From contig NZ_JMCB01000001.1 in assembly GCF_000737315.1 (NCBI RefSeq), forward strand, positions 933,509 through 997,508: a stretch of 64,000 bases of DNA, written 5' to 3'. The first letter of the stretch is position 1, and every line of letters begins with the position of its first letter. Source of the DNA: Hyalangium minutum (GTDB lineage: Bacteria; Myxococcota; Myxococcia; Myxococcales; Myxococcaceae). Of this stretch, positions 33,103 through 64,000 are shown piece after piece. A model generated the notes under the pieces. The model saw only the letters and a program-made list of their open reading frames with translations, was not told the origin of the DNA and did no database searches. A program made the translations under genes and the position numbers.

Positions 33103-34359
33103 ATGACCTCCGCTGCAACCGCAGCCCCTGCGCCTTCGAGCGCGCTGCGCAACCCGGGCTTTCGAATCTTCCTGCTCACGTTCCTGCTGGCCATGATGGC
33201 CGACAACGTCGAGCACGTGATCAGCTACTGGGTGGCCTACCAGAAGTTCCACTCGGCGGCGCTGGGGGGATTCGCGGTGGTGTCCCACTGGCTGCCCTTC
33301 TTGGTGTTCTCGGTGCCGGTGGGGGCGCTCAATGACCGGTTCGACTCCCGGCGCCTCATCCAGTGCGGAATGGTGCTCTTCATCATCGCCTCCGCGGGCT
33401 GGGGGTACTTCTTCGTCACGGACTCCCTGCAGGTGTGGCACGCGATGGTGCTGCTCACCCTCCACGGCTGCGCGGGCGTGCTGTGGAGCACCTCCAGTCA
33501 GATGTTGCTCTACGACATCGTGGGGCCGGTGTCCCTGGCCAGCGCGGTGCGCCTGAACGCCACGGCGCGCTACCTCGGATTCCTGGTGGGCCCCAGCGTG
33601 GGCAGCATCATCATGCGGACGCTCGGGCCCACCTGGGGCATCTTCCTCAACACGGTGTTCTATCTGCCCCTGCTGCTCTGGATGACGGGCGCGCCCTATG
33701 GCCGGCACTTCCGCGGGGCGGCCACGGGCCCCAAGCGGGCCGTCCGGGGGCTCGCCGACATCGTGCAGACGGTCCGCGACGTGCGCGAGCTGCCCGTGGT
33801 GGCGGCCATGGTGCTGCTGGCGGGGGCGGCGTCCTTCTTCATCGGCAACAGCTACCAGGCGCAGATGCCGGGCTTCGCGCAGGACCTGGGCCATGGAGAC
33901 CCCGGGCTGACCTACACGCTCCTGCTGGGAGCGGATGCGGCCGGAGCCCTGCTCGCGGGCATCCTGCTCGAGACACGGGGGACGTGGCTGCGCACCGAGG
34001 TGGCCTCCGCGATCAAGCTGGCCTTCCTGTGGGGCTGCGCGCTCTTCACGTTCTCGTTCATGCGTGCATACCCAGCGGCCATTGTCGTGCTCTTCCTGGC
34101 CGGTTTCCTGGAGCTGTCCTTCAGCAGCATGACCCAGGCGCTGGTCCAGCTGAATGCGCCGGACGCCATCCGTGGCCGCGTGCTGGGACTCTTCAGCATG
34201 TCGGCCTCCGGTCTGCGGGCCTTCAGCGGCATCACCGTGGGGCTCCTGGGGAGTGTCACCAACATTCACGTCTCACTCGCCGTGTCCGCCCTGGCCTTTG
34301 TGACAGTGGCGGGCGTGCTGCTCTTCCGGCGCCGCGCTCAGAGCACGGCGGTAGGCTGA
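33103..34359 (+). CDS. MFS transporter
   Basis: About 12 TM segments, GALNDRFDSRRL motif A and PDAIRGRVLG. Confidence 0.92.
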   Translation: MTSAATAAPAPSSALRNPGFRIFLLTFLLAMMADNVEHVISYWVAYQKFHSAALGGFAVVSHWLPFLVFSVPVGALNDRFDSRRLIQCGMVLFIIASAGWGYFFVTDSLQVWHAMVLLTLHGCAGVLWSTSSQMLLYDIVGPVSLASAVRLNATARYLGFLVGPSVGSIIMRTLGPTWGIFLNTVFYLPLLLWMTGAPYGRHFRGAATGPKRAVRGLADIVQTVRDVRELPVVAAMVLLAGAASFFIGNSYQAQMPGFAQDLGHGDPGLTYTLLLGADAAGALLAGILLETRGTWLRTEVASAIKLAFLWGCALFTFSFMRAYPAAIVVLFLAGFLELSFSSMTQALVQLNAPDAIRGRVLGLFSMSASGLRAFSGITVGLLGSVTNIHVSLAVSALAFVTVAGVLLFRRRAQSTAVG

Positions 34360-39353: not shown

Positions 39354-39370
39354 CGCAGTCACGGGCTGAG

Positions 39371-39406
39371 GCGGCTCCGGATCCTGCTGTTGCGGCCCGG
39401 AGCCGC
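39371..39406 (+). terminator. Hairpin after the M4 protease gene
   Basis: 10-bp inverted repeat GCGGCTCCGG...CCGGAGCCGC. Confidence 0.5.
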
Positions 39407-39426
39407 CGGGTACAGTCCGCAGCCGC

Positions 39427-42400
39427 ATGCAGCCCCAGGCCGACGTCATCATCCTCACCGCGCTGAAGGAGGAGTACGACGCCGTCTTGGAGGTCAGCAC
39501 TGGCGCCCTCCCTGGGAGCACCTGGGAGACAGAGCTCAGAGATGACGGGCAGACCGTCTCCTTCCGCTCTTTTCAAGGGACTCGCGGTGGGGAGCTTCGC
39601 GTGGCGGTGCTCCAGGCTCCAGCCATGGGAGGCGTGGCGGCCGTGGGCGCCATCGCGCCTCTGGTGGAGCCCTACAAGCCCCGGTGCCTGGCCATGTGCG
39701 GCGTCTGCGCGGGGAATCCCGGTGTGGTGGAGCTCGGGGACGTCATCGTCGCGGATGTGCTCTGGGACTACGATCAGGGGAGGGCCGAGCGCACGGTCAC
39801 GGACTCGGGAGCCACGGTCGAGCGCGTCCAGGGCCGACGCCTCTCCTATCTGCTGAAGGCTCGCTGGAAACGAGCGGCGGTGCCCTTCGTTCCACCCGGC
39901 GCGGACTCCTGGCTGAAGCTGCGGCCCCGCTCCTCCCAGGACTCGGCGGAGAAGCCGTTCCGAGTCCATGTGGGCCCCCTGGCCACGGGCACGAAGGTGC
40001 AGCGGGGACCGGGGATCTTCGAGCGGCTGATCCAGGAGGATTACAAGGTGCTCGGGCTGGAGATGGAGGCTGCGGCGCTCGCGGCCTTCGCTCACGAGCA
40101 CGAGCTCCCCCACCTCGTGATGAAGGGGGTCATGGACTTCGCGGACTCGGCGAAGAATGACCGCTTCAAGGCCTTCGCCGCGCGGGCTTCCGCCGAGTGC
40201 CTCGTGGCATTCTTGCGAGAGAACCTGCCGGCAGGTCCCGCGGACGCAGCCATCTCGGAAGAGGCGCTGGCCGCCTACAAGCGCGCCCTCGTCGAGCAGT
40301 CCTCCGTGCCTCACCTGGAACTCCACGGGCTCGCGAACATCGAGCCTGGCTCGCGGGAGATGAAGCTGGAGCTGCTCAAGTTCGCGGTGGCGCCCTCGCT
40401 GCATGACGGAGCCCATGCGGCCAGCCGCCGAGAGCTGGAGATCCAAGAGCAGCTGGCCCGCGGAGTGGAGGATCCCGTCCAGAGGCACGCACTCGCCCAA
40501 GAGCGCGAGCAACTCATGGATGCGCGGTGGGACTATTACGCGGTCCGAGGCAAGGAGCACATCAGGCCCCATTCCTTCGCGCAGGTGCTGTCCCGGCACG
40601 AGCGGCTCGTCATCGTCGGAGATCCCGGAGCGGGCAAGAGCATCCTCCTTCGCCTGGCACTGCTGGCTTGCGATGAAGGTCCTCTGGGACAAGATGCCCG
40701 GCAGCTCCTGGGAGAGGAAGATCTCTTCAACGATCAGTCGCTCGGCGCACTCAAGGCGCTGCGCAGACTGCTCCCCGTGCCCATCAAGCTGGGCAGGCTA
40801 GGAGAGGCACTGAAGAAGGAACGTGGCCTGTCGCTGGAGGAGTTCATCCGCCGCCACCTCGGCCAGCATCGCGCGAGCAAGAAACTCCTCGGCAGCCTCC
40901 CGTTTCTGCTCAACACGGGGCGAATCTTCCTGCTGTGCGATGGGCTGGACGAAGTGGCGGAGGAGCTCCGGGAGCGCGTGGTCCAGAGAGTGACGGCACT
41001 GCTCGAGCAGTATCCAGACGTCCGGCTCCTGCTAACCACCCGTCCCTATGGCTACCGCCCACGAGTTCCCGGCCTGGAGCATGCCCGGCTTGCCGCACTC
41101 AGCTCCTGGCAGCAGCAAAAGCTCGTGTCGCGCCTGCATGTCCTCGTGGAGGGGGGACAGTCTGGCGAAGCGGCGGGAGCGGCACGCGCGCGCCAGCGAA
41201 CGAGGGCCTTGCTGCGCTCGGTCCATACGCGGCCCGAGTGGCAGACGCTCAGCAGCAACCCGCTGCTGCTCACCTTGTCCGCGCTGACCCGCACCGACCA
41301 AGGGGCCCTGCCTCGGCACCGGGTGATCGTCTACAACAACTTCGTCACGACACTCCTGGCGGAGTGGCGCTCCGCGGTCCCCTTGAAGAAGGCCCAGCAA
41401 CTGCTGGCGGCCTGGGCCTCCGTCGCCTTCGAGCTGGTGCGCCAGGAGAAGCACCTGGGCATCGCGAAGGCCCACCTGCTGCGGATGCTCGCGGACACCC
41501 AGCACACACCGCCGAAGAGGGCTCAGAGCTTCGCGGAGACCGCGCTCCAGCTCGCGCTCGAGAGGGGGCTCGTGCGCGAGGAGGAAGAGACCGTCTCATT
41601 CTGGCACCGGACCTTTGGCGAATTCCTGGCCGCGTATGCCCTCACGGGCACGGACGAGCAGGGGGCCGCGAGCCGTATCCTCGAAGCAGGCCCGCTCCCC
41701 CTCCCCGTCCTTCAGTTCGCGGCGGCACGGCTCGACCATGTGCTCCACGCCCGCCCGCAAGCCGATGCTCTCGCGCGGGGATTGCTCGCCCAGGACGAGC
41801 GAGCCCCCGGACGGCTGCTGCGGCCGGGGCTGCGCCAAGTCTCTGCCTGTCTCACGGATGGAGTCTCCTTCTCCCAAGAGCTGGTCGAGCGCGTCTGGAC
41901 CTCGTGGGCCGAGCTGCTCGCACAGACTGCGCCCTCCCGGGCCTGGAGCCAGTTCAGGCCGCTCACGCAGGCGGCCCTGCCGCGCACGCTGCCGGCCGCT
42001 CTCGTGGAGCGCTTCGCCCGCCTGCCGGATCGAGGTCTGTACGAGATCCATCATGGGACGTCCCTCCTCGTGGCCCGGCTGGCCCGGGAGGCACCTGACG
42101 CCGCGCGCGAGGTGTGCACGCGGTGGATGAACGCCCAATCCTCCCTGGCAGGAACCCAGAAGTTTCACGGCGCCATCGGCCTTGCTTCTCTCGGGCAATG
42201 GAGTGACGAAGTCATCGCCGCTCTGGGCGAGTTCCGCGAGGTCCTGAAGCTGGGCGTGGAGATCCTCGCGCAGCAAGTTCGCGACGGCGGCCCGGTGTTG
42301 AGGGAGCGGCTCCTGACGCTGGCGCAGGCCCGGATCCCCGGGGACGACCCTTCCATGGGGAAGCCAGCCCCCTCGGATCTGCCCACCGCCCGAACCCAAG

Positions 42401-45400
42401 AGCATGAGCGCGTGGTCGAGCGAAGGCTCTCCGCGGCGGTCCTCCTCGCGATCTCCGGGACGTGGGAGGAAAACGGAGCCTGGGTGCTGCACAGGGCGCT
42501 CTCAGGAAAGGAGAGCCCGTCCCGGCTGGACGAACTCAAGGGGGTGCTCCTGCACTGCGCCACGGCGGCCCCCGTGCAGGCGAGCCTCCTTGAATGGATC
42601 TGCGACGGCCAGCTCCTGGGCGACAACGCCCGGCAGCTCGTCCGCGAGGTCGCGGCCTTGGTGGAGGACCTGCCCCAGCAGGTGCTGGAGAGGTTTGCGC
42701 AAGCCGAAGGGACGGTGCAGGAGCAGCTGGAGGAATTGCTCGTCCAGGTGGGAACAGAGCGGCGCTCCCTGCTCGACCTCCTGTGGGGTTGGTTGGAGGA
42801 TCCTCAGGAGGAACGCCGGGTGCGCGCGGCCCGCCTCCTGCGCAAGCTCGCCCGGCATGAGCCGCGGTACCACGAGGCGCTGCGGCGTGGCATGCAGGCT
42901 CCCGAGCCGGTATGGCGCGTCCGTTGGGCCTACGCGTCGTTTTCCCTCAACCCGGAACTCTCGAAGCGAGCACTGGCCACACTGCAAGACTGTGCGCGCT
43001 CCCCGGATCCCGCTGTGCTTGAGGCCGTTTACGGGAGAAACAAGGCGCTTGATTGCGTCAGGTGGGAGGGAGTCCCGGCGCTGGAAGGCTGGCTCGCCTG
43101 TGCACTGGACCCCACCGTGCCAGACGCGGCGAGGCTCCGAGCGGCCCAGCTCGTCATGTATGCGAAAGAGAGCTGGGAGCCTGTGAGGGAGATCTTTTAC
43201 GCCCTGCTGGACTCCGAGGATTCGCTGGTGCGGCACAGTGCGGCGATCGAGCTATTCTTGCGAGCGCCCTCGGACATGCGCGTATCTCTGATGGCGGCGG
43301 AGAGGGCCGCACAGACGGACGGCTGCCGAAGGCTCAAGATGGGCCGTGAAAAACTGGAGGCCTGCGCCCGGGAGGCCGTGCAAGCCATCCTGAGAGGCCT
43401 CCCGCGCCAAGCGGTGTCGAAGCCACCTGATAGGTCCTGGGGAGTTCAATCCGATTGGAGCGCTCTCCTCGCGGAGCTCGTGACGCAGGATCTGCCGGCC
43501 GCGGCCCCTCTGATCCAGAACTTGAACCAACCCGGAGTGGCTGGCGAAGCGGCGGAGGCCGCACTCGAAGAGCTGGCGCGCAAGCACCCCTTTGTGCGAG
43601 CAGCGATCGGCGAGCGCCTGCGTCAGGCCGTGGCCGCCCCCCACCCGCTCGAGCTGCAGCGCCTCGTGAGGCTGGGCCTCCTGCATGGAGAACTTCAGCC
43701 CTTGGCCATCCCCGCGAGCCGGGGGCTCGATCCCCACACCCTGTCTCCGGGTGAGGCCTCATGGCTGGCCAAGCTCTTGAAGTCGGCGCACGCGGACGAG
43801 GACGCGCTCCGCTTCTGGCGGAGCGCGCTCGAGGGAGCGAGGGCCGTGGACACCCTCGAGGCCGCGGCAGAGCTCGCGGTGTACTTTCCAGGAGAAGCGG
43901 GGCCCTGGATTCAAGGAGCCATCGCGCGGCTGCTCGGCTCGCCCGAGCCCTCTCTCCGCTTGGATGCGGCGCGGCTCGCGCTGCTGTGTGGCGTGCACGA
44001 GGAGGGTGCCGTCCAGGTGCTCATCGGCTGTCTGGAGCTGCGCGAATCCCTTCATCGGGCGCCCGATAAGCGCCTCAACCTTCTGGAACTCCTCGAAGGC
44101 CGCGCGTTCGATCGCCGCGCGGAACACAAGCTGTTGCAGGAGTCCTCCCGGTCGAACATTCGCACCGAGTTCCTGGCGATGCAGACGCTCTACCTTCATC
44201 GGCCCGCTCGAGGCGCGACGATCCTGGAGCAGTGGCTCGGCGCCGAGTCGATGGAGCACTTCCAGTACGCTGTGGAAGCTCTCACGGCGCGCGGCCACTC
44301 GGGCGAGCGGGTATCCGCGGCGCTGATGGAGCGCCTGCGCTCCGCTCCCAAGGCACAGCTTGTGACGCTGATGCACCTCGCGCACGAGCAGAAGGCCTCC
44401 CCAAAAGAAGTCCTGGAGCGGCTGCTCGCGCGTCATGGTGGCGATCCCGAGGGGGGCTTGGTGGATGTGGCGCTCATCAACTGGCTCTATCGGCACCCCA
44501 CTCTCTGGGCCGAGCTGCGGCGGCAGCCTCCGGAGCTGCGCGAGTCCTTCAGGATCCTGCTCTACAACGATCCCTTCGTGACCCGCGACACCGTCGCCTT
44601 CACTGTCGAGCGTGCACTCGCGCAGAACGACATCCTGAACGTCAATGTCTGGGAGAGCGCTGTCAGCATCTGGTGTCGGCATCCCAAGGGAGAGTCAGAG
44701 GAACACCCGCGCCCTTCCCGGCGCATCGAGACGGCAGCCCCTGAGCAGGTACGTGGCTGGCTTCAGGAGCTGCTCCCCCAGGAGCCCCTCCCCAGCACCC
44801 TCGAAGGGCTGTCGTGCTTCGACCGGCTCGCTGAGCTGGCAGAGCTGCCTCTGGACCACCGTCTCCCCGTTTTGAAGCGCGCACTGGAGATCGACCTCGG
44901 CGCACGGGCGCACGAGCCCACCTATCCCTGGCGTCTCGAACTGCAGGCCACCGCCGCGCTCCGGGTGTTGAAGCTCGGAGGCTCCCATGGCCGACTCCTG
45001 CCCATTCTCCAGCGAGCTGTCGATGACCTGCGATCGCCGTGGGGGCCCAATGCCTTTCCGTTCGCGAGCGCACTGCTGACGTACTGGCCGAACGACATCA
45101 CGCGGAGGCAGTTCGTCCTCCGCACGGCCCTCGCTGAAGACAACGGCTTCAGCACCGACCAACTGCTGGTGCTCCTGGAGATGGCCCAGCTCCCACAAGA
45201 GGAGCGCATCTCCCTGCTCTGCCTGTGCCTGGGACTGCAGCCCCGCGCGACGCTGCCCACCTGTGTCCCCTCCGCGAGCGCCGCTTGGAGAGAGCACGCT
45301 CCCAGCCTGTTTGCCGCCCTCGAGAACCTCGGCTGCGACAAAGCGCGCCTTGCGTCCCTCCTCCATGAGTTCGTCTCCACCTATGGAACGAAGCTCTCGG

Positions 45401-45858
45401 CGCAGGCCCAACGGGCGCTGCTCGATCGGCCTGAACTCACCGCAGCGAGTTCCGCGAAGCTGCTGGCAGGAGTGCTCCTGGAGAGGCCCTACGACGCAGA
45501 CCCTCCAGGCCAGCGGTGGCTGGAGCGATTCGCCTCGAAGCGGCCCCAAGGTGAAGAGCGCTCTCTCTTGGAGCGCCACTGGGATTCGGACTCCCTGTCG
45601 ACCCACCTGAAATGGCTGGCGGACTTCTCCCAAGCGGATGAGCCGGAGCCGGTGGAGCAAGCGCTCTGCGAGCTCACAGGCGTGGACTCCCCGCTCTACC
45701 GTCAGGCCCGCCAGCGCCACGCCCTCTCCGACGCGCAGTGGAGCCAGTTGCTCGAGCAACTCGCGCTCGCGCCCGAAGAGCCGAAGGCCTCTCAGTTCGC
45801 CAAGGAGTGGCTCCTCATGAGCCTGTGGCGCACATGGGAATCACCGGCAGCCGTGTAG
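39427..45858 (+). CDS. NLR-like protein: N-terminal purine nucleoside phosphorylase (MTA/SAH nucleosidase) domain, NACHT NTPase and long helical/HEAT-like sensor
   Basis: PNP motifs ILTALKEE, MCGVCAG, GDVIVAD, LEMEAAA and KGVMDFAD. Walker A GDPGAGKS, Walker B LLCDGLDEV, TTRP and NPLLL. Confidence 0.88.
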   Translation: MQPQADVIILTALKEEYDAVLEVSTGALPGSTWETELRDDGQTVSFRSFQGTRGGELRVAVLQAPAMGGVAAVGAIAPLVEPYKPRCLAMCGVCAGNPGVVELGDVIVADVLWDYDQGRAERTVTDSGATVERVQGRRLSYLLKARWKRAAVPFVPPGADSWLKLRPRSSQDSAEKPFRVHVGPLATGTKVQRGPGIFERLIQEDYKVLGLEMEAAALAAFAHEHELPHLVMKGVMDFADSAKNDRFKAFAARASAECLVAFLRENLPAGPADAAISEEALAAYKRALVEQSSVPHLELHGLANIEPGSREMKLELLKFAVAPSLHDGAHAASRRELEIQEQLARGVEDPVQRHALAQEREQLMDARWDYYAVRGKEHIRPHSFAQVLSRHERLVIVGDPGAGKSILLRLALLACDEGPLGQDARQLLGEEDLFNDQSLGALKALRRLLPVPIKLGRLGEALKKERGLSLEEFIRRHLGQHRASKKLLGSLPFLLNTGRIFLLCDGLDEVAEELRERVVQRVTALLEQYPDVRLLLTTRPYGYRPRVPGLEHARLAALSSWQQQKLVSRLHVLVEGGQSGEAAGAARARQRTRALLRSVHTRPEWQTLSSNPLLLTLSALTRTDQGALPRHRVIVYNNFVTTLLAEWRSAVPLKKAQQLLAAWASVAFELVRQEKHLGIAKAHLLRMLADTQHTPPKRAQSFAETALQLALERGLVREEEETVSFWHRTFGEFLAAYALTGTDEQGAASRILEAGPLPLPVLQFAAARLDHVLHARPQADALARGLLAQDERAPGRLLRPGLRQVSACLTDGVSFSQELVERVWTSWAELLAQTAPSRAWSQFRPLTQAALPRTLPAALVERFARLPDRGLYEIHHGTSLLVARLAREAPDAAREVCTRWMNAQSSLAGTQKFHGAIGLASLGQWSDEVIAALGEFREVLKLGVEILAQQVRDGGPVLRERLLTLAQARIPGDDPSMGKPAPSDLPTARTQEHERVVERRLSAAVLLAISGTWEENGAWVLHRALSGKESPSRLDELKGVLLHCATAAPVQASLLEWICDGQLLGDNARQLVREVAALVEDLPQQVLERFAQAEGTVQEQLEELLVQVGTERRSLLDLLWGWLEDPQEERRVRAARLLRKLARHEPRYHEALRRGMQAPEPVWRVRWAYASFSLNPELSKRALATLQDCARSPDPAVLEAVYGRNKALDCVRWEGVPALEGWLACALDPTVPDAARLRAAQLVMYAKESWEPVREIFYALLDSEDSLVRHSAAIELFLRAPSDMRVSLMAAERAAQTDGCRRLKMGREKLEACAREAVQAILRGLPRQAVSKPPDRSWGVQSDWSALLAELVTQDLPAAAPLIQNLNQPGVAGEAAEAALEELARKHPFVRAAIGERLRQAVAAPHPLELQRLVRLGLLHGELQPLAIPASRGLDPHTLSPGEASWLAKLLKSAHADEDALRFWRSALEGARAVDTLEAAAELAVYFPGEAGPWIQGAIARLLGSPEPSLRLDAARLALLCGVHEEGAVQVLIGCLELRESLHRAPDKRLNLLELLEGRAFDRRAEHKLLQESSRSNIRTEFLAMQTLYLHRPARGATILEQWLGAESMEHFQYAVEALTARGHSGERVSAALMERLRSAPKAQLVTLMHLAHEQKASPKEVLERLLARHGGDPEGGLVDVALINWLYRHPTLWAELRRQPPELRESFRILLYNDPFVTRDTVAFTVERALAQNDILNVNVWESAVSIWCRHPKGESEEHPRPSRRIETAAPEQVRGWLQELLPQEPLPSTLEGLSCFDRLAELAELPLDHRLPVLKRALEIDLGARAHEPTYPWRLELQATAALRVLKLGGSHGRLLPILQRAVDDLRSPWGPNAFPFASALLTYWPNDITRRQFVLRTALAEDNGFSTDQLLVLLEMAQLPQEERISLLCLCLGLQPRATLPTCVPSASAAWREHAPSLFAALENLGCDKARLASLLHEFVSTYGTKLSAQAQRALLDRPELTAASSAKLLAGVLLERPYDADPPGQRWLERFASKRPQGEERSLLERHWDSDSLSTHLKWLADFSQADEPEPVEQALCELTGVDSPLYRQARQRHALSDAQWSQLLEQLALAPEEPKASQFAKEWLLMSLWRTWESPAAV

Positions 45859-57435: not shown

Positions 57436-58116
57436 CTATGAGTTCATGCGGATGAGATGGGTGCGGCTCATGGCGCGCATGTCATCGGCAATGCCGGAGA
57501 TCTCATCCATCGCCCGGCTGGCCTCGGTGTCCGAGCCCCTGGCGTTCGCGTCCGCAGGGGTGGCGCGCAGCCGCTCGCTGCGCTGGGCGATGAACTTGAG
57601 GATGTAGGCGCGCTCGGCCCCGGCATCCGCCCGAGCCTCATTGAGGCCATGTGCGCCGCCCTGCCCCGCCCGCTCCAGCAGGGCCTTCGCTTGCTGGAAC
57701 TGCGCCTGGGGCATGTGTACCAGCGTCTGAGCTGCCAGCTCCGCCTGCGGCTGCACCAGGATGCCCTCGTGCCCCGTGGTCGTCGTGGCGCGTGGATCCG
57801 CCACCCCCTTGGCCAGCGCATGCCGGATCTCCGGCGGCAACCGCTGCGCGGCCCGAGGGCTCTCCTGGGCCATGTCGAGCACCCGCACATAGGTGCCGAT
57901 GGCCGGCTTCGCGTTGGGAGTCGCCAGCACGTGCTGAAGCAGGAGGAGCTCGCGCTGGAGTTCGGCGCCGGTCAGGCTCTGGAGGTGCGTGGTGACGCGA
58001 GTGCGCTTCGCATCGGGCACGCCGGTGCGGCGGAGGGCGGCGTCGATCTGAACGAGGGGTTGCGACGCAGCGCTTACGGGACGTGGGCCTTTTGAAGTGT
58101 CGAAGCCATCGGCCAT
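57436..58116 (-). CDS. Hypothetical helical protein, possibly C-terminally truncated
   Basis: AAGGAG RBS before ATG 58116 (MADGFDTSKG). High GC3. Confidence 0.65.
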   Translation of the reverse strand: MADGFDTSKGPRPVSAASQPLVQIDAALRRTGVPDAKRTRVTTHLQSLTGAELQRELLLLQHVLATPNAKPAIGTYVRVLDMAQESPRAAQRLPPEIRHALAKGVADPRATTTTGHEGILVQPQAELAAQTLVHMPQAQFQQAKALLERAGQGGAHGLNEARADAGAERAYILKFIAQRSERLRATPADANARGSDTEASRAMDEISGIADDMRAMSRTHLIRMNS

Positions 58117-58139
58117 GGCACGGACTCCTTGGGAGGAGG

Positions 58140-58198
58140 CTACCAGGGGCAGTCGAGGACTTCCACGGTGCGCGTCACCGGCGGGACCGTGTCCCCCC
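58140..58198 (-). pseudogene. 3' remnant of a third DUF5011-tail paralog
   Basis: GDTVPPVTRTVEVLDCPW*, versus GNSAPPVTRTVNVVNCPW* (8226) and GNSATPITRTVDVVNCPW* (48912). Cut off at the att-like repeat. Confidence 0.75.
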
Positions 58199-58224
58199 GA
58201 GGCGGCGGGAATCGAACCCGCCGC
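58199..58224 (-). mobile_element. att-like repeat 1: tmRNA 3'-end fragment
   Basis: Minus strand reads GCG-GCGGGTTCGATTCCCGC-CGCCTC, i.e. T-arm plus acceptor 3' strand with the tmRNA-type CGCCTCC(ACCA) end. No upstream RNA body is present. Confidence 0.7.
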
Positions 58225-58451
58225 AGCGACCTCACTTCGGCGGGGGCGTGTTGAGGAACTGCTGCTCCCACACCGCTCAGTGCGCTGCCCCACCTGCGCG
58301 AGGGAACGTTGGTGCGGCTCCAGGCGTTAGCGGTGCGCCCCAGTCCCGCCTCCTTCAATGGCACCCTCTCCACCCGGTGCACCGCCGTCACCCTCCTCCA
58401 GAGGGGCGAGCCTTGACCCACAGCCCTCCGCTTGATTGAAAGGACGTGGCC

Positions 58452-59369
58452 ATGCGTCTCCGAACTTGCAGCGCCCCCCTGGTACTGCTCCTGCTCTCGG
58501 CCTGCGCCACAATGGAGCCGACCCCGGGAGAGATGGAGCCCCCGAGTCCGAGATTCGCCAACCTTCAGCGCGCAGCCCAGTATCCCTGGACGGATGACGG
58601 GCATTGCGTAGTGCGAGAAGCTTCCAACGAATGGCCTGTCCTGGCGGAGCGGTGCTTTCACGCGCTCGATCACAAAAGAGTCAAGTTTCGCGATGTTACC
58701 GGAAGGTGCGCCGTAGCCTCTACGGCGCTGGCTCCCGCAGCCGTGGCCCTCTGTGTCTTTGCGGCACCTGAGATCGTCGTCGGCGCAGTGATTGTGGTGG
58801 GAGCCGTAGTGGTGGCTGCTGCCATCACAGAAGGGCTGGAGGCTTACGAACGGAACGCATCCCGTGAGCGTGCGAAGCAGACGACTCAGACACGGCCATC
58901 CCATGCGGAGGAACCCGTGGCGAACGGCGAGCCCACGCCCAGAGGCTTGGGCCGGGATTGGTTTCCCCCAGAGCCGCCAGAATTGGAGCCGCATGACCGC
59001 CGCCCCGAGTGCACTCCCAGACGGGTTCCTCCCAAGGGTGGACACCCCTTCCATAACAAGTGCGCTGACGCGATTCCTGGCAACGCCTTCCGTGGCGCCA
59101 ACGCGCTCGTCAACGGCAAGGCTTTCGACGCGCTGCAACCTGCCACGCGAAGACTGTGGGAGGTCAAAACCACCGCCATTGAAACCTACAATCCCTTCGT
59201 TCAGCAGATGGAACTCGCCCAGCAAGTAGAAGAAGGGCTACGAGAACGCGAACTTGCGGCGGCCTGCGGCTATGATTTTGCCATCGGCGTTCGTACCGAA
59301 GTGCACAAAAAGATGCTGGAGGAAGCAGAGCCCCGCCTCACTGTTGTTCTCATGCCGTGGTGCAAATGA
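58452..59369 (+). CDS. SitA-like lipoprotein toxin with C-terminal PD-(D/E)xK nuclease-type domain (DUF6310-like)
   Basis: Lipobox LLLLSAC-AT, hydrophobic middle segment, C-terminal KAFDAL...WEVKT. ATGA-coupled to the next gene. Confidence 0.75.
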   Translation: MRLRTCSAPLVLLLLSACATMEPTPGEMEPPSPRFANLQRAAQYPWTDDGHCVVREASNEWPVLAERCFHALDHKRVKFRDVTGRCAVASTALAPAAVALCVFAAPEIVVGAVIVVGAVVVAAAITEGLEAYERNASRERAKQTTQTRPSHAEEPVANGEPTPRGLGRDWFPPEPPELEPHDRRPECTPRRVPPKGGHPFHNKCADAIPGNAFRGANALVNGKAFDALQPATRRLWEVKTTAIETYNPFVQQMELAQQVEEGLRERELAAACGYDFAIGVRTEVHKKMLEEAEPRLTVVLMPWCK

Positions 59370-60124
59370 CGATGATGCAGAACACCCTCGGTATCAAAGT
59401 CCACGCGCCTGCGCTCGTATGCGACGACAGCCGCCCTGTGGCTGTTGTCCATACCATGGAACGCGCGCTCCCCGGTTTGCGGCTGGAGTGGACCGTCTCT
59501 GACGATCATCAAATCATCCATCTGCCGCAGCGCGATGCATGGCTCGCCCGGGCCAAGAAAAACGGAGGCTTTCCTCTCGTCTGCAACAATGACGAGCATT
59601 ACCCCGTGATGATCTCCGGGTTGGCACTTTCGGCAAGCTCTGGAGCAGGTGGCCAAGCGCAGCTTGACGTCCACGCCAAATTGCCACTGGACGCGGGTGG
59701 CATCGCCGCGGCAGCGAATGTACTGGAGGGCATCGCAGAGAGTGCTCGTGCATTCTGGGGACAAGCGACGCCCTTCGAAACGGGTGTGGAGATCTCGCGG
59801 CAGACGAGGGACCCGGTGCGTAAGCCGGGGGAACCGTCACGAGGGCTGCCAGCGCTCAAGCTCCCAGAGTCTCTGCGCTCGCCAGAGATTCCGTATCACC
59901 TGGGTTGGCTGAACTACTGGTCGGCCGCTACCGCAGAAGCCATTGGGTTCCCTGACCCTGCCCGCGACTTGGAGCTGCTCACGCGGGCGCGGCGCACGTC
60001 GTCGGGCGGATGGGTCGTGCAGCTCACCGATGCGCCGCTCGATCTCGACAACCCCGCGCACCTGGACACGCTGAAGCGGGCCTACGAGCGCTTCCCGGAG
60101 ATCGGCGGGCGCGCGGCACGGTGA
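59366..60124 (+). CDS. Cognate immunity protein (DUF5953-like)
   Basis: ATG overlaps the toxin TGA. C-terminal LGWLNYWS..TAEAIGFPDPARD.ELL...GWVVQLTDAPLDLDNPAHL..L.RAYERFPEIGGR. Confidence 0.72.
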   Translation: MTMMQNTLGIKVHAPALVCDDSRPVAVVHTMERALPGLRLEWTVSDDHQIIHLPQRDAWLARAKKNGGFPLVCNNDEHYPVMISGLALSASSGAGGQAQLDVHAKLPLDAGGIAAAANVLEGIAESARAFWGQATPFETGVEISRQTRDPVRKPGEPSRGLPALKLPESLRSPEIPYHLGWLNYWSAATAEAIGFPDPARDLELLTRARRTSSGGWVVQLTDAPLDLDNPAHLDTLKRAYERFPEIGGRAAR

Positions 60125-60166
60125 CCGATTGGCAGCCGAGGCAATAGCGGCGGGTTGCTCTGCTTG

Positions 60167-60192
60167 GAGGCGGCGGCAATCGAACCCGCCGC
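60167..60192 (-). mobile_element. att-like repeat 2: tmRNA 3'-end fragment
   Basis: GAGGCGGCGGCAATCGAACCCGCCGC, 25/26 identical to 58199-58224 in direct orientation. On the minus strand it extends to CGCCTCCA. Confidence 0.7.
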
Positions 60193-60235
60193 TTTTGAGC
60201 GGAGACGCCTGGGTTGGATCTCCATCGAACTGTGT

Positions 60236-60280: not shown

Positions 60281-61429
60281 TCAGGCCGTCGTGATGGAGG
60301 CGGCGCCCTGCCCGAGACGACGGGGGCGCCGCAAGCCCAGCTCAACCAGGGCTTCGCCCGCCTGGGCCTTCAGGCTCTTCAGCTCGGCTGCTGCCTCACT
60401 CTGGCCGAATTGCCCCGAGAGCCATCGGCGCAGGTCCGTCTCCAGCTCCCCTGCTGTCTGGTAACGCGCGGCCTTCGAGCGCTGAAAGAGCTTGCTCAGG
60501 GGGACGCGCAACATATCGGGCAGGCCCGCCAGGAGCACTTCCAGGTCTTCCGGTGTGTAGGTCGCCGCACGCCAGATCGTCTGCTCGACCGCAGCGTCAC
60601 ATCCGGCCAGCTCGGCACGCCGGATCGCGCGCTCCACGCGGGCGGCCTGCCGCTTCGGCAGCGCCGCCTTCGCCGCGCTCGAGACGCCCATATCCGCATC
60701 CAGCAGGTTCTTCCCCGTGGCCATTTCGAGCATGACGAGCCCGAGCGCGAAGAGGTCCGAGCGTGCATCCACCCGGCCGCCGAGCAGCATTTCCGGCGAC
60801 GCGAAGTAGGTATCCCCCTTGGGGCGACGCACGGTGGAGACGACGCGGCCCTTCAACGTGGAGAGCGCCAGCCCGAAATCGGAGACCTGAACCCGGCCCT
60901 CCCCATCCACGAAGACGTGAGACAGGTCGACCGCCCGGTGGACGATTCCCAGCGGGTTCCCCTTCTCGTTCTTCGCGGTGTGCGCGTGCTCCAAGGCGCT
61001 CGCCACTGCCGCGCCGACGTACACCGTGAAGAGGGGCGAGAACCAGCGGCGGCACTCCTGAACGACTCCGAGCAGCTCATCCAGCCCCTGCCCTGTCGGA
61101 TGATCGGTGATGACGTACCAAGCCTCTTCGGTCTTGTGCAGCCCGTGAACGCGGAGGATGCCCGGGTGCTGAAGGTACGTCGCGAGCCGCACTTGCTCTT
61201 CGAGCTTCGCCCGAGCCTTGAAGACGCGGTTCCCGTCCTCCACCCTCGGCGAGCCGACCGCCTTGAGCAGCACCTTCCCCTTCGGGTGCCCATCGACTCG
61301 ACGACGCGCCACAAACAAACTCAGGCCGTGATGCGCCTCGCCCAAGTCTTCGCGGAACTCGTAAGCCACCCCCTCCCTGTCGGAGAACAGAATCGCCCCC
61401 TTGGGTAGCTTGAACTCGATTGCGGCCAT
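60281..61429 (-). CDS. Ser/Thr kinase-like protein, probable pseudokinase
   Basis: Keeps VLLK, DFG, SPE and DLFALG. Catalytic loop is HRAVDLSH (no Asp, no Asn) and the Gly-loop is degenerate. GGAGG RBS before ATG 61429. Confidence 0.85.
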   Translation of the reverse strand: MAAIEFKLPKGAILFSDREGVAYEFREDLGEAHHGLSLFVARRRVDGHPKGKVLLKAVGSPRVEDGNRVFKARAKLEEQVRLATYLQHPGILRVHGLHKTEEAWYVITDHPTGQGLDELLGVVQECRRWFSPLFTVYVGAAVASALEHAHTAKNEKGNPLGIVHRAVDLSHVFVDGEGRVQVSDFGLALSTLKGRVVSTVRRPKGDTYFASPEMLLGGRVDARSDLFALGLVMLEMATGKNLLDADMGVSSAAKAALPKRQAARVERAIRRAELAGCDAAVEQTIWRAATYTPEDLEVLLAGLPDMLRVPLSKLFQRSKAARYQTAGELETDLRRWLSGQFGQSEAAAELKSLKAQAGEALVELGLRRPRRLGQGAASITTA

Positions 61430-61547
61430 GCTCGCTCCTCCCCTCGCTCGCGCGGGCACCATGCCAGGACGAGACACGCGCACACTACCCACGAGATGGG
61501 GTCGGAGGGAATGCCCGCCGACCTGCCACGTCGCCTTGCAGGACCGC

Positions 61548-63287
61548 TCAGGGCCAGTAATCCACGGGAGATCCGGTCGTACTGTTAAAGATTCTCGCGG
61601 CACCGTCTTTCACTTCGTCAGCACCCAAGTCGATGATGAAGCAAACGGGAAGCTCGTCCTGCCGCGGCAGCTTCACCCGGTCATACCTCACGAAGACTTG
61701 GCCCGGTTTGCCAGTCTTCGTCTCCCCGGGCACGACGTAGACCTTGCCGCCGAAAAACCGCGTCCCAGGGGGCGCTACCTCACGCTGCTCCGGGAGGATG
61801 GCGTCCGGAACAACCCCGACGACCGTGTCGCCCGCGCGAAGCCACACGTCCTCTAGCCGAGCGTATCGGTCATCAGCCACAACCTTAAAGTGTTGGGACT
61901 CACCCCAGCGGAGCTGCTTTCGCGTTGCGACCGCGCCCTCCGGGCAGGTGAACGGTTCGGGTCGCACCTGGGGCCCGGTGCATCCCGCCGCGAGGGCACA
62001 CGTGAGTGGCACGACTTTGCGCAGATCCGAGCCGGGGGCGGGCTTCTGTCGGCGTGCTGGCTTCGGGTCTTCGGGGGGCGGAGTCTTCACGGTTGAACCT
62101 TCCTTCTGTTCCGGGACAGGGACCGGCTCTGTGCCGACCCCAGGCGCGGTGGCGGGTGACATATCAGGAGCGGGCGGCCCGGAAGGCTCGACACGGAAGA
62201 GGCTCGACGTACCGGTCGCCCGTGGCGCTGTGGGCGGCTCTGGCGCATCCGAACGGCTCCAGAGCGCCACGACTGCGGCAAGCATGAAGGCGGCCCCCCC
62301 CGCCGCGAGCACTTTCCCCGAGCGATGGGCGCGGGCAACCGCCCTCCCGGCGGGCAACCTAGGCTGACGCTGCGCTGAGGGGGGATGCGCGGGCTCCCCG
62401 TATTCAGCCCCTGGGTCTGCATGGAGTCCCGTCAGCTCGCGGTGAAGGGCCGCCGTATCCACCGGGCGCCTCGTGGGATCTCGGGACAGCAGGTCGTCAA
62501 CGAGGTCGCTGAGCGCCTCGGGAATACGCGCGTTCAGCTCTCGCACCGGAGAAGGTGGCGCGAAGGGGTTGTTCAGACTCTCCCGCGGGCGCGTCTCCGT
62601 CGGCCGCGGATCCGTCAGCAGCTCGTAGAGCATCGCGCCGACGGTGAACAGCTCGTCAGCCACCTGGAAGGCGTAACGCGCCCGGTGCTCGTCTCTGTGC
62701 TCGCGCAGGAACTGGAATTGCTCAGGTGCGCGGAACCGATCCGTTCCAGGGGGCAGGCCGCTCTGGGTCAATTCCGCCGCTTGCGTGTGGGTCGCGCAGC
62801 TGAAGTCGATGAGGATCGGCTCGCCGTCGCTCTTTCGGATCAGCACGTTGGACAGCTTCAAGTCCCGGTGCAGGATGCCCTTGCTGTGCATGTACCTGAG
62901 AGCAGAGGCAATCTTCACGAAGACACCCAGGATTTCATGCACCGTGGGGTGCTTCTTTTCCTGCCACTCGCCCAGCGTCCAGCCTTCCACGTACTCGAGC
63001 GCGATGTACATGTTGCCAGCTTCGGCGTAGCCATACCCCAGCGGCTTGATGATGTTCGGGTGGCCCTGTTCCATCAACAGCAGCAGCACCGTCAATTCAC
63101 GCATCGCCCTCGCATGCGTCTGCATGTCGTCGCCGCTGGCATCGCGATGCCGCGCCACCTTGAGCGCTCGGAGTTGCCCATTCTTCTGCACCAGGTAGAC
63201 GACTGCGGATCCACCGTCGCCGAGTTCCCTCAGGACGTGCCAACCGTCAATGACGGTGCCAGAAGGGAGCCTGAGAAGCGTCGTCAT
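61548..63287 (-). CDS. Membrane Ser/Thr protein kinase
   Basis: LGDGGSAVVY, ALKV, HRDLKLSN, IDFS and RAPEQ. One TM segment and a C-terminal extracytoplasmic domain. Confidence 0.92.
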   Translation of the reverse strand: MTTLLRLPSGTVIDGWHVLRELGDGGSAVVYLVQKNGQLRALKVARHRDASGDDMQTHARAMRELTVLLLLMEQGHPNIIKPLGYGYAEAGNMYIALEYVEGWTLGEWQEKKHPTVHEILGVFVKIASALRYMHSKGILHRDLKLSNVLIRKSDGEPILIDFSCATHTQAAELTQSGLPPGTDRFRAPEQFQFLREHRDEHRARYAFQVADELFTVGAMLYELLTDPRPTETRPRESLNNPFAPPSPVRELNARIPEALSDLVDDLLSRDPTRRPVDTAALHRELTGLHADPGAEYGEPAHPPSAQRQPRLPAGRAVARAHRSGKVLAAGGAAFMLAAVVALWSRSDAPEPPTAPRATGTSSLFRVEPSGPPAPDMSPATAPGVGTEPVPVPEQKEGSTVKTPPPEDPKPARRQKPAPGSDLRKVVPLTCALAAGCTGPQVRPEPFTCPEGAVATRKQLRWGESQHFKVVADDRYARLEDVWLRAGDTVVGVVPDAILPEQREVAPPGTRFFGGKVYVVPGETKTGKPGQVFVRYDRVKLPRQDELPVCFIIDLGADEVKDGAARIFNSTTGSPVDYWP

Positions 63288-64000
63288 GGCTTGCCCTCCT
63301 CAACGGGCTTGGGAAGGTTCGCACGTGGAATGACAAGGCTGCGGCCATCCCCCCCGTCCACTTCCACCGTGAAGACAAGTCCGGCACTCGGGGGCGGCTC
63401 TTCCGCGACGACGAGCACCCGAATCACTCCCTCGGGAGTGCTCGCATCCACCGCAGCTGTCACGAGACGTGCCCGCAGCGGAACTCCTCCCTTTCCCGTC
63501 AACGTCGCATCACGTGGCGCAAAGAGCGGGCGACCGGGAAAACTGTTGATCACGACGTCGAAAAGCACCCACCCATTGCCGCGATAGGACACGCCCCGGT
63601 CCGTCCAGAGTCCCTGCGCACGGTCCTTGACGGGCTCAATGACCGCGGTCTGAACGCCGCGGTCGTTCACGTATCCTTTCAGCACGAAGTCTTCCGGCCT
63701 GGGCTCGGGGCGCTGCACTTCGGGGGGGCACGCCGCCGGCGGCTCGGGGCGCTTCACATCGATCCGGAGGTCCACTTCGGCCGGGTCCATGACGAGCACG
63801 AACGCGGCCCGAGCGGGGGCCCTCCCATCCGCGAAGAAGACCGCCAGCTCGTGACGCTCGCCGACCCGGGAGTCCGCCGCAGCCTGGACGATGATCGAGC
63901 GTAAGAGTTCACCGGCTCAAGCAGCCAGAGCAGCCGGAGCGGTCTCGAAGCTCGGGAGTAGCGAGGGAGGCTGGAGGCCGTGGCGGTGCGCCGCCAAGGC
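63284..64000 (-). pseudogene. DUF2381-like protein, 5' part disrupted and running off the window
   Basis: RSIIVQ...FFADGRAPARAAFVLV.DPAEVD.RIDV and a C-terminal LRARLV...RVLVVAEEP pattern. In-frame TGA at 63917-63919. The stop is ATGA-coupled to the kinase. Confidence 0.6.

What the first reader, a model, noticed from the sequence alone, without database searches (positions are those of the whole stretch)
58140..60192. Toxin-immunity cassette bracketed by tmRNA-3'-end direct repeats (att-scar array)
Seen: two direct 26-bp repeats (58199-58224 and 60167-60192, 25/26 identical) enclose only the lipoprotein toxin and its immunity gene. On the minus strand each reads as a T-arm (GCGGG-TTCGATT-CCCGC) plus CGCCTC(CA). 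Both share a GCG flank before the T-arm, where I recall tmRNA having GAC. Known: this 3' end with G3-U70 alanine identity is characteristic of tmRNA (ssrA), a common tyrosine-integrase target, and repeated integration leaves tandem displaced 3' fragments. Inference: kin-discrimination toxin cassettes here are stacked and exchanged as integrase-free, att-bounded units of about 2 kb (an integron-like or tandem-island array). An intact ssrA and an integrase should then lie beyond 64000.
Basis: partly seen in the sequence, partly recalled or inferred. Interest (0 to 1): 0.82.

Follow-up and report, generated by a model that had tools for sequence, protein, structure and literature searches.

The report
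tmRNA-end repeats flank a toxin cassette
Two short copies of the tail end of the tmRNA gene bracket a two-gene putative toxin-immunity cassette in the myxobacterium Hyalangium minutum; they are most likely the leftover attachment sites of a small mobile element that has lost its integrase, which is a known kind of scar carrying an uncharacterised cargo.

Summary
The repeats lie at 58199-58224 and 60167-60192, are 25/26 identical, and are the only two such copies in the window (0 expected by chance). They enclose only a lipoprotein gene with a DUF6310 C-terminal domain and a DUF5953 gene.

The window is the last 64 kb of H. minutum contig JMCB01000001.1. The repeats match nt 335-357/359 of this genome's own ssrA. 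That gene sits 1.9 kb from the end of another contig and points off that end.

In about 15 related loci, displaced copies all start at the same ssrA position, the 5' strand of the T-stem. In Archangium an intact tyrosine integrase abuts such a copy. Eroded pieces of that integrase lie beside homologous DUF6310/DUF5953 modules, and four metagenome modules are bracketed by two direct copies 2.1-3.0 kb apart.

Best reading: these are att scars of a small ssrA-targeting integrative element family that carries a putative nuclease toxin-immunity pair, with the integrase gone here.

Not supported: an integron-like mechanism, stacking within this window, and current mobility. The prediction of ssrA beyond 64000 cannot be tested, because the contig ends there.

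This is a new member of a known kind (tmRNA-gene islands and integrase-less, att-flanked cis-mobilizable elements). Interest is moderate.

The parts
58199..58224 (-). Copy 1 of the tmRNA 3'-end fragment (att-type site). Minus strand: GCGGCGGG-TTCGATT-CCCGCCGC-CTC. The left arm is GCGG rather than the ssrA GACG. Identity to ssrA stops after CTC.
   Evidence: It matches nt 335-357 of H. minutum ssrA 23/23. It lies 83-108 nt upstream of the start of the conserved flank gene. Homology with sister species ends at 58138.
58452..59369 (+). Lipoprotein with a conserved N-terminal region, a hydrophobic segment and a C-terminal DUF6310 domain. Putative PD-(D/E)xK-type nuclease toxin.
   Evidence: Pfam DUF6310, E=2e-54. 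Lipobox MRLRTCSAPLVLLLLSAC. More than 970 homologues, with D226, K239 and H201 invariant and E237 nearly invariant. The AlphaFold2 C-terminal domain has pLDDT above 90. Top Foldseek hits are the T6SS TseT-TsiT and PA3907-PA3908 complexes, followed by restriction-endonuclease-fold nucleases.
59366..60124 (+). DUF5953 protein overlapping the toxin gene's stop codon by 4 nt. Putative cognate immunity protein.
   Evidence: Pfam DUF5953, E=7e-125. A DUF5953 gene directly follows the DUF6310 gene in every complete module examined.
60165..60192 (-). Copy 2 of the tmRNA 3'-end fragment. Minus strand: GCGGCGGG-TTCGATT-GCCGCCGC-CTCCA, with one mismatch in the 3' strand of the T-stem. Its downstream flank (CAAGCAGAGCAA) resembles the native ssrA 3' flank.
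   Evidence: It matches nt 335-359 of ssrA 24/25. The flank matches H. minutum ssrA downstream DNA (34 nt, 91%) and resembles the H. rubrum flank CCAAGCAGCAAAAACC. The stretch 60146-60192 is 96% identical over 47 nt to a Myxococcaceae MAG (L119). On the + strand RNA it forms an 18-bp hairpin 35 nt after the immunity stop (z=-3.4).
57436..58116 (-). Conserved 226-aa hypothetical gene. It marks the left limit of the variable segment.
   Evidence: Orthologues at 81-88% identity in H. rubrum, H. versicolor and a MAG. Nucleotide homology to the window covers only 57436-58138, none of these loci has a motif upstream of the orthologous gene, and the neighbouring genes differ.
60281..61429 (-). Ser/Thr kinase gene that ends 88 nt before copy 2 (minus-strand sense). 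It is followed upstream by a second kinase (61548-63287) and a DUF2381 gene (63284-63895), then the contig end.
   Evidence: Gene calls are from the NCBI record. None of these genes is syntenic in the sister species examined.

Best explanation
The two repeats are attachment-site scars left by a small integrative element that targets the 3' end of the tmRNA gene.

How the site works. Elements of this family encode a phage-type tyrosine integrase. Their attP mimics the tmRNA T-arm and acceptor end: GCGGCGGG-TTCGATT-CCCGCCGCCTCCAC. The 8-bp stem halves would serve as the inverted core-binding sites and the 7-nt T-loop as the crossover region (inferred). Crossing over inside the T-loop leaves ssrA with its own left arm (GACG). 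Every displaced copy receives the element's left arm (GCGG), and both window copies have it.

The cargo. It is a two-gene module: a DUF6310 lipoprotein with a PD-(D/E)xK-like C-terminal domain (putative nuclease toxin) and a DUF5953 protein (putative immunity).

State in this window. The integrase has been lost completely, leaving a 1.97-kb att-bounded, integrase-free unit. It lies in a hypervariable segment that may be the distal part of the ssrA island array, because ssrA sits at the end of another contig pointing outward.

Shown versus inferred. Shown: the ssrA origin of the repeats, the shared boundary, the link with the integrase and with this cargo in other genomes, and the lack of synteny. 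Inferred: the crossover position, toxin and immunity activity, and that the unit is now immobile unless an integrase acts in trans.
For: - The repeats are real, and a pair is far beyond chance.
- The window is H. minutum JMCB01000001.1 and ends at the contig end.
- The genome's own ssrA (L125 c1893-2252) ends in GGACGCGGGTTCGATTCCCGCCGCCTCCAC.
- The motif is the tmRNA 3' end: 97 of 126 genome hits lie inside ARAGORN-called tmRNA genes, plus 3 calls flagged tmRNA*.
- Displaced copies from about 15 loci all begin homology at ssrA nt 334-336.
- Most Archangiaceae copies carry the GCGG left arm.
- In H. versicolor the real ssrA and a GCGG-type copy 1.4 kb apart enclose a lipoprotein gene pair with no recombinase.
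- An intact integrase (PF00589, E=3e-32) abuts the motif in Archangium L043 and L097.
- Its 3' remnants follow the motif in L128, L140, L161 and L169. Larger fragments lie beside DUF6310 genes in L151 and L155.
- DUF6310/DUF5953 modules are bracketed by two direct motif copies in L140, L144, L147 and L169. L147 has the same orientation as the window. L128 has two tandem cassettes sharing a motif.
- Some copies are followed by a native ssrA terminator, the B' arm.
- The cassette has atypically low GC3.
- Sister species share only the flank gene.
Against: - No ssrA and no recombinase were found in the window.
- Copy 1 lacks the last bases of ssrA (CTC|GGGGGG). It is therefore not a clean displaced 3' end and may mark a secondary site or erosion.
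- Homology between cassettes covers only the two genes plus about 10-55 nt upstream. It does not reach the motifs.
- The module's orientation relative to the motif differs between loci (window and L147 versus L128, L140, L144 and L169).
- Twelve of 18 modules with at least 1.3 kb of flank on both sides have no motif.
- No empty site was found. The synteny break with sister species lies 60 nt from copy 1 rather than at it.
- Toxin and immunity functions are untested. The PDB sequence search found nothing, and the Foldseek E-value is only 2e-3.
Confidence: 0.75

Rival explanations
1. The unit is still an active, non-autonomous cassette. On this reading it is a cis-mobilizable or integron-like element: integrase-free toxin-immunity units bounded by tmRNA-type att sites are excised, circularised and reinserted by an integrase supplied in trans. 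This would shuffle kin-discrimination toxins between att copies and between genomes.
For: - Bracketed 2-3 kb units recur in at least five independent contexts and in both orientations.
- Core sites are 18-20/20 conserved (16/20 for the second copy in L169), while cargo genes are only 69-86% identical at the nucleotide level and non-coding flanks show no homology. This suggests integrations more recent than cargo divergence, or selection on the site.
- L128 has a tandem arrangement.
- There is precedent for integrase-less ssrA islands regarded as cis-mobilizable (PMC3146451).
Against: - No integrase was found in the window or beside H. minutum ssrA.
- Integrase remnants differ in length between loci (36-225 nt), which fits independent decay rather than spread of one miniature element.
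- Copy 2 has a mismatch next to the presumed crossover region, and copy 1 is truncated.
- No empty site or circle junction is available.
- Most DUF6310 modules lack the motif.
Confidence: 0.18
2. The motif is a dispersed palindromic (REP- or terminator-like) element, or a tRNA-like RNA signal. On this reading it merely resembles the tmRNA T-arm and acts in transcription termination or mRNA stability of the flanking genes. It would not be a recombination scar.
For: - The core is an 8-bp GC hairpin.
- At copy 2 the + strand RNA forms an 18-bp hairpin 35 nt after the immunity stop (z=-3.4).
- Copies occur away from ssrA in several genomes.
Against: - Identity to ssrA extends through the non-palindromic acceptor strand (CGCCTCCAC). 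In some copies it continues into the native ssrA terminator.
- All copies start at the same ssrA nucleotide.
- The copies are linked to an integrase gene or its remnants.
- Orientation relative to neighbouring genes is not fixed.
- No U-tract follows the hairpin, and the terminator scan finds nothing there.
- There are no Rfam hits except a meaningless tRNA-Sec match at E=4.9.
Confidence: 0.05
3. The two copies arose by a local duplication or by chance. They have no relation to ssrA-directed integration.
For: Both copies share the non-ssrA GCG flank, as expected if one were copied from the other.
Against: - None of 100 shuffles gave a match to the 24-mer or to the 20-nt core.
- The same GCGG-type copy recurs in other genera next to integrase genes and next to homologous cassettes.
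- There is no similarity between the two copies beyond 26-28 nt.
Confidence: 0.02

Closest known systems
Genomic islands integrated at the tmRNA gene, with displaced ssrA 3' fragments (Williams, 'Traffic at the tmRNA gene', recalled from memory; Islander database, PMC4383910)
   Same: - A direct repeat equal to the 3' part of ssrA marks the island ends.
- A tyrosine integrase is used in related loci.
- The identity block starts at the T-arm.
- The region downstream of ssrA is hypervariable between species.
   Different: - In the window neither end is the intact ssrA, and there is no integrase.
- The unit is only 1.97 kb, whereas typical islands are far larger.
- Copy 1 lacks the terminal ssrA bases.
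Dehalococcoides ssrA genomic islands and their integrase-less 'cis-mobilizable' members (PMC3146451)
   Same: - Units lie in tandem downstream of ssrA, each bounded by a roughly 20-bp ssrA direct repeat.
- Some units lack an integration module and were proposed to move by accretion with neighbours.
   Different: - Those islands use a serine recombinase (DsiB); here the linked enzyme is a tyrosine integrase.
- Their cargo is reductive dehalogenase genes, and the published integration module alone has six genes.
- All of their repeats lie within 100 kb of ssrA. Here linkage to ssrA is unproven.
Cis-mobilizable elements (CIMEs) of Streptococcus thermophilus ICESt1/ICESt3 (recalled from memory; concept cited in PMC3146451)
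   Same: They are flanked by att sites, lack recombination and transfer genes, and derive from an integrative element by deletion. Integrase remnants are seen here in relatives.
   Different: Mobilisation by accretion has been shown experimentally for CIMEs. Nothing has been shown here. The target gene and the host phylum also differ.
Tycheposon islands of Prochlorococcus (bioRxiv 10.1101/2020.12.28.424599)
   Same: Islands next to tRNA or tmRNA genes are built by successive integrations. They leave partial tRNA copies and fragmented integrases scattered through the island.
   Different: The host, the integrase lineages and the cargo (nutrient uptake, defence) all differ. No toxin-immunity mini-units have been described there.
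SitA/SitI lipoprotein toxin-immunity pairs of myxobacteria (PMC5562445, PMC8546572)
   Same: - The host is a myxobacterium.
- The toxin gene encodes a lipoprotein with a C-terminal putative nuclease domain.
- An immunity-like gene follows directly.
- There are many paralogues per genome.
- The loci are often on mobile DNA. A relative in L128 keeps the N-terminus but has a different C-terminus.
   Different: - SitA families have escort domains of about 375 aa. This protein is 305 aa in all.
- There was no NCBIfam hit of any kind.
- The DUF6310 domain is not among the toxin domains named in the passages read.
- TraAB-dependent delivery is untested.
Integron gene cassettes
   Same: Small, promoter-poor, recombinase-free units bounded by recombination sites that can occur in arrays.
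   Different: - There is no IntI and no attC-type site.
- The site is a tmRNA T-arm recognised by a phage-type integrase.
- Cassette orientation is not uniform.
- The cassettes carry their own upstream region.

Membership tests
tmRNA/tRNA-gene genomic island (Islander-type) | A displaced fragment identical to the 3' part of the target gene bounds the island | tested here: met
   Copies match nt 335-357 (23/23) and 335-359 (24/25) of H. minutum ssrA.
tmRNA/tRNA-gene genomic island (Islander-type) | The other boundary is the intact, regenerated target gene | tested here: not met
   There is no tmRNA or tRNA gene in the window. ssrA is on contig JMCB01000032.1, 1.9 kb from its end. Adjacency to the window cannot be tested.
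tmRNA/tRNA-gene genomic island (Islander-type) | An integrase gene lies inside the island | tested here: not met
   tblastn with the Archangium integrase finds nothing in the window. The Pfam scans of window ORFs show no recombinase. Intact or eroded integrase is present in related loci.
tmRNA/tRNA-gene genomic island (Islander-type) | The segment is absent from related genomes, with breakpoints at the repeats | tested here: inconclusive
   Three relatives share only 57436-58138, so the break is 60 nt from copy 1. The right side has no synteny at all and no empty site was found.
Cis-mobilizable element (CIME) | Flanked by att sites while lacking recombination and transfer genes | tested here: met
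   Two att-type copies enclose only the DUF6310 and DUF5953 genes.
Cis-mobilizable element (CIME) | Derived from an integrative element by deletion | tested here: inconclusive
   There is no integrase trace in the window. Homologous units elsewhere keep 36-225 nt of the integrase 3' end.
Cis-mobilizable element (CIME) | Can be excised or mobilised by an integrase acting in trans or by accretion | not testable with these tools
   This needs PCR for circles and empty sites, or an integrase assay.
Integron cassette | attC site with its characteristic imperfect palindrome, and an IntI integrase with attI and Pc | tested here: not met
   The site is the tmRNA T-arm and acceptor end. The linked recombinase is an ordinary PF00589 integrase. 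No integrase is present in the window.
SitA/SitI outer-membrane-exchange toxins | Lipoprotein signal peptide with a lipobox | tested here: met
   MRLRTCSAPLVLLLLSAC; A17 and C18 are invariant in 30 homologues.
SitA/SitI outer-membrane-exchange toxins | Family-defining N-terminal escort domain of about 375 aa (PMC8546572) | tested here: not met
   The whole protein is 305 aa and the conserved N-terminal part is about 130-180 aa. There was no NCBIfam hit of any kind. No SitA sequences were available for direct comparison.
SitA/SitI outer-membrane-exchange toxins | C-terminal nuclease toxin neutralised by the downstream immunity gene, with TraAB-dependent transfer | not testable with these tools
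   Only the gene arrangement and a fold prediction are available.
PD-(D/E)xK (restriction-endonuclease-fold) toxin domains | Conserved D...(D/E)xK catalytic motif on a restriction-endonuclease-like fold | tested here: inconclusive
   D226 and K239 are invariant and E237 is nearly invariant. The confident AlphaFold2 C-terminal domain matches the TseT-TsiT and PA3907-PA3908 complexes (probability 0.99-1.0, E=2e-3, TM 0.47-0.49), then XisH, Card1 and BstEII. The tool does not say which chain of the complex was hit. The PDB sequence search was negative.

The most novel reading that the evidence does not exclude
Myxobacteria of the Archangiaceae and Myxococcaceae might run a tmRNA-T-arm-based cassette system. 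In it, miniature integrase-free toxin-immunity units of 2-3 kb, each bounded by ssrA-type att sites, are captured, stacked and swapped by a tyrosine integrase supplied in trans. That would give an integron-like engine for diversifying kin-discrimination toxin repertoires, and it could operate at ssrA copies seeded around the chromosome.
Probability: 0.15. Interest if true: 0.75.

Novelty: new member of a known kind. Interest (0 to 1): 0.45.

Why it matters
Myxobacterial genomes carry dozens of lipoprotein toxin-immunity loci that set kin boundaries. How these loci move is only loosely described: they are said to frequently reside on mobile DNA (PMC8546572).

This locus and its relatives tie one large uncharacterised family to a concrete vehicle. 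The family is DUF6310/DUF5953, with more than 970 homologues. The vehicle is a set of small tyrosine-integrase elements that use the tmRNA T-arm as their att site, and then decay to att-bounded two-gene units.

Three practical things follow:
- A search handle, the 20-nt core plus the GCGG arm, for finding such cargo.
- A candidate integrase and att pair that can be tested.
- A testable candidate nuclease toxin family.

The result does not change the known picture of tmRNA-gene islands.

Tried and rejected
- ARAGORN and Rfam on the window found no tRNA or tmRNA gene. The permissive Rfam scan gave only a tRNA-Sec match at E=4.9 over copy 1, which I judge spurious.
- Exact look-up of the toxin protein failed, because the record calls a shorter ORF. 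The genome was identified through the kinase instead.
- Giant-island idea. I considered that window 21-64 kb is one ssrA array, because window 19850-20982 and an ECH gene resemble genes next to ssrA copies in H. versicolor and Archangium. I rejected it. The ECH match is paralogue-level (39%). The lipoprotein pair is itself a mobile-looking module. H. rubrum ssrA-flank genes have no counterpart in the window.
- Joining the window end to the ssrA contig end. No overlap or shared ORF was found, so this stays unresolved.
- The attP-arm element of L054 and L076 is not present in the window.
- Profile search of the toxin against PDB sequences gave nothing meaningful.
- NCBIfam gave no hit for toxin or immunity.
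- No papers mention DUF6310 or DUF5953.
- I could not determine which chain of the TseT complexes was matched.
- The terminator scan found nothing at the repeats.
- The third motif match, at 33338, is a coding coincidence in MFS motif A.
All copies in this genome could therefore not be counted.
Full report
**1. What is in the sequence**

A 24-nt version with up to three mismatches finds only these two sites in 64 kb, against 0 in 100 dinucleotide shuffles.

On the minus strand each reads GCG-GCGGG-TTCGATT-(C/G)CCGC-CGCCTC, that is a T-arm followed by the 3' acceptor strand. Copy 2 carries one mismatch in the 3' strand of the T-stem and continues as CTCCA. Copy 1 diverges after CTC.

ARAGORN and Rfam find no tRNA or tmRNA gene anywhere in the window. 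A permissive Rfam scan gives only a meaningless tRNA-Sec hit (E=4.9).

Between the repeats lie two genes. The first, 58452-59369(+), encodes a 305-aa lipoprotein (MRLRTCSAPLVLLLLSAC) whose C-terminal 125 residues are Pfam DUF6310 (E=2e-54). The second, 59366-60124(+), overlaps the first gene's stop codon by 4 nt and encodes a DUF5953 protein (E=7e-125).

The unit has GC 0.637 and GC3 0.66/0.73. The flanking genes have GC3 0.81-0.85.

**2. Where the window comes from**

A window kinase is encoded on NCBI contig JMCB01000001.1 of GCA_000737315.1. NCBI names the M16 peptidase of this same assembly as Hyalangium minutum. Window position 64000 is the end of that 997,508-bp contig.

**3. The repeats are ssrA 3' ends**

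Of the 126 matches, 97 lie at the 3' end of an ARAGORN-called tmRNA gene and 3 more were flagged tmRNA*. In these genes the motif is preceded by GGACG.

I located H. minutum's own ssrA through the M16 peptidase gene that neighbours ssrA in H. versicolor. It is L125 c1893-2252 on contig JMCB01000032.1 and ends ...GGACGCGGGTTCGATTCCCGCCGCCTCCAC. Window copy 1 equals its nt 335-357 (23/23) and copy 2 its nt 335-359 (24/25).

The 12-14 nt after copy 2 (CAAGCAGAGCAA) also resemble the native ssrA downstream flank of H. minutum and H. rubrum. The stretch 60146-60192 is 96% identical over 47 nt to a Myxococcaceae MAG.

**4. They behave as att sites**

Four observations point the same way.

- *Shared boundary.* In about 15 loci from Hyalangium, Archangium and metagenomes, the displaced copies all begin homology at ssrA nt 334-336, the first base of the T-stem.
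- *A distinct left arm.* Most copies, including both window copies, carry GCGG where the real gene has GACG. This turns the T-arm into a perfect 8-bp inverted repeat around the 7-nt loop. That is the layout of a tyrosine-recombinase core site. It is also what a crossover within the loop predicts: ssrA keeps its own left arm and each displaced copy keeps the element's. The crossover position is an inference.
- *An integrase next door.* In Archangium lansingense (L043) and an Archangium MAG (L097) a GCGG-type copy is followed at once by the 3' end of an intact integrase gene (PF00589, E=3e-32). The DNA on the other side of the copy differs between the two genomes.
- *A native terminator in some copies.* Some copies are followed by an ssrA intrinsic terminator, the host-derived arm. 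In H. versicolor the real ssrA and a GCGG-type copy 1.4 kb away share about 130 nt, including that terminator. They enclose only a small lipoprotein gene and a partner gene, with no recombinase.

**5. Link to this cargo**

The nearest homologous cassettes always keep the DUF6310-DUF5953 pair.

In L128 and L129 (cassette 86% identical to the window's) a perfect GCGG-type copy lies about 150 nt (nearer 170 nt by the tblastn end at 7520) after the DUF5953 gene. It is followed by about 200 nt of frameshifted integrase 3' end. Next comes a second lipoprotein gene with the same N-terminus but a different C-terminus, and then another motif copy. This is a two-cassette tandem.

A metagenome scan returned 59 DUF6310 loci. 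Four modules are bracketed by two direct motif copies 2.1-3.0 kb apart: L140, L144, L147 and L169. L147 has the same arrangement as the window, with the motif on the strand opposite the genes. Several others have one copy. Integrase fragments lie beside nine of the 61 DUF6310 loci scanned: the 59 metagenome loci plus L127 and L128.

Two things limit the claim. Twelve of 18 modules with at least 1.3 kb of flank on both sides have no motif. And homology between cassettes covers only the genes and about 10-55 nt upstream, not the spacer DNA out to the motifs.

The units with the motif on the gene strand share a common left end, but they keep different lengths of integrase remnant, 36-225 nt. This looks like independent erosion of integrase-bearing ancestors rather than the spread of one miniature element.

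**6. Context in Hyalangium**

The 226-aa gene left of copy 1 (57436-58116) has orthologues at 81-88% identity in H. rubrum, H. versicolor and a MAG. Nucleotide homology to the window covers only 57436-58138, none has a motif upstream of the orthologous gene (the MAG locus has one unrelated copy about 6 kb downstream), and every neighbour differs. The cassette thus lies in a hypervariable segment. The nearest synteny break is 60 nt from copy 1, and no empty site was found.

Downstream of ssrA the picture also varies by species:
- H. minutum: a 190-aa ORF, a degenerate GCGG-type copy after about 970 nt, then a partial ORF and the contig end.
- H. versicolor: one extra copy.
- H. rubrum, H. gracile and A. 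gephyra: none within about 9 kb.

H. minutum ssrA points off the end of its contig, and the window copies point away from the window's contig end. The two ends could therefore be neighbours. I found no overlap and put this at roughly one in three.

**7. The genes**

The DUF6310 family is large, with more than 970 hits. The N-terminal 130 residues and a hydrophobic segment are well conserved. The C-terminal domain falls into subtypes but keeps H201, D226 and K239 invariant and E237 nearly so.

AlphaFold2 models residues 181-305 with pLDDT above 90. Foldseek's best PDB matches are the P. aeruginosa T6SS TseT-TsiT and PA3907-PA3908 complexes (probability 0.99-1.0, E=2e-3). XisH, Card1 and a restriction enzyme follow, all restriction-endonuclease-fold proteins. 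The tool does not say which chain of the complex was hit, and the PDB sequence search was empty.

'Nuclease toxin plus immunity' is therefore a reasonable inference, not a result.

The protein resembles SitA toxins in being a lipoprotein with a C-terminal putative nuclease and an adjacent immunity-like gene. However, SitA families are defined by escort domains of about 375 aa (PMC8546572), this protein is 305 aa in all, and NCBIfam gives no hit. I do not file it as SitA.

**8. Rest of the window**

Pfam scans of the large high-GC3 ORFs show ordinary chromosomal genes and no recombinase. 'Stacked cassettes here' is not borne out.

**9. Verdict**

The mechanism is that of tmRNA-gene islands and their integrase-less derivatives. 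Both are well described: Islander (PMC4383910), the Dehalococcoides ssrA islands including cis-mobilizable members (PMC3146451), and tycheposon arrays (bioRxiv 10.1101/2020.12.28.424599).

What is new is the host group, the very small size of the unit, and the recurrent link with an uncharacterised toxin-like family. Whether such units still move is open.

Noticed in passing
window 19850-20383(+) and 20380-20982(+): A second two-gene module: a small lipoprotein plus a 200-aa partner with an ATGA overlap, GC about 0.62 and no Pfam hit. It is homologous to the gene pairs that lie inside and just beyond the 1.4-kb ssrA-bounded unit of H. versicolor (L054 4746-5180/4133-4828 and 2727-3089/3086-3755). 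No motif copy lies next to it in the window.
   Followed up: partly
window 39370-45855(+): A 2162-aa protein with an N-terminal PNP_UDP_1 phosphorylase-superfamily domain and a NACHT NTPase domain. It is an NLR-like protein of the kind often tied to anti-phage defence.
   Followed up: no
window 33338-33357(+): An 18/20 match to the tmRNA core. It lies in frame within MFS transporter motif A (GALNDRFDSRRL), so it is a coding coincidence and not an att site.
   Followed up: yes
L054 3988-4027, L076 2029-2068, L126 4793-4832: A conserved 40-nt element, CATTGCTACAGCAGACCCGCGCTGGGGCGCTCTCAACACA, lies about 110 nt upstream of displaced ssrA copies in H. versicolor and Archangium. It also stands alone 4.6 kb downstream of H. 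rubrum ssrA. It is a possible attP-arm sequence or an island remnant.
   Followed up: partly
window 60159-60203(+): Around copy 2 the + strand RNA can form an 18-bp hairpin, using G-U pairs, that starts 35 nt after the DUF5953 stop codon (MFE -41 kcal/mol, z=-3.4). No U-tract follows. The att scar may have been co-opted as an mRNA 3' stem-loop.
   Followed up: partly
L125 1-2252 (H. minutum contig JMCB01000032.1 end): The genome's ssrA is followed by a low-GC 190-aa ORF on the opposite strand. Next come a degenerate GCGG-type copy (899-924, GCGGAGGGTTCGATTCCTGCCGACTCCAC), a proline-rich partial ORF and the contig end. This is a small ssrA array cut off by the assembly.
   Followed up: partly
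L128 8224-8946: The second cassette in this metagenome locus encodes a lipoprotein that is 65% identical to the window toxin over residues 1-192 but has an unrelated C-terminus with no DUF6310. The family therefore swaps C-terminal domains as polymorphic toxins do.
   Followed up: partly
window 60281-63895(-): Two Ser/Thr kinase genes and a DUF2381 gene (a Myxococcus paralogous family) fill the stretch between copy 2 and the contig end. None is syntenic in the sister species examined.
   Followed up: no
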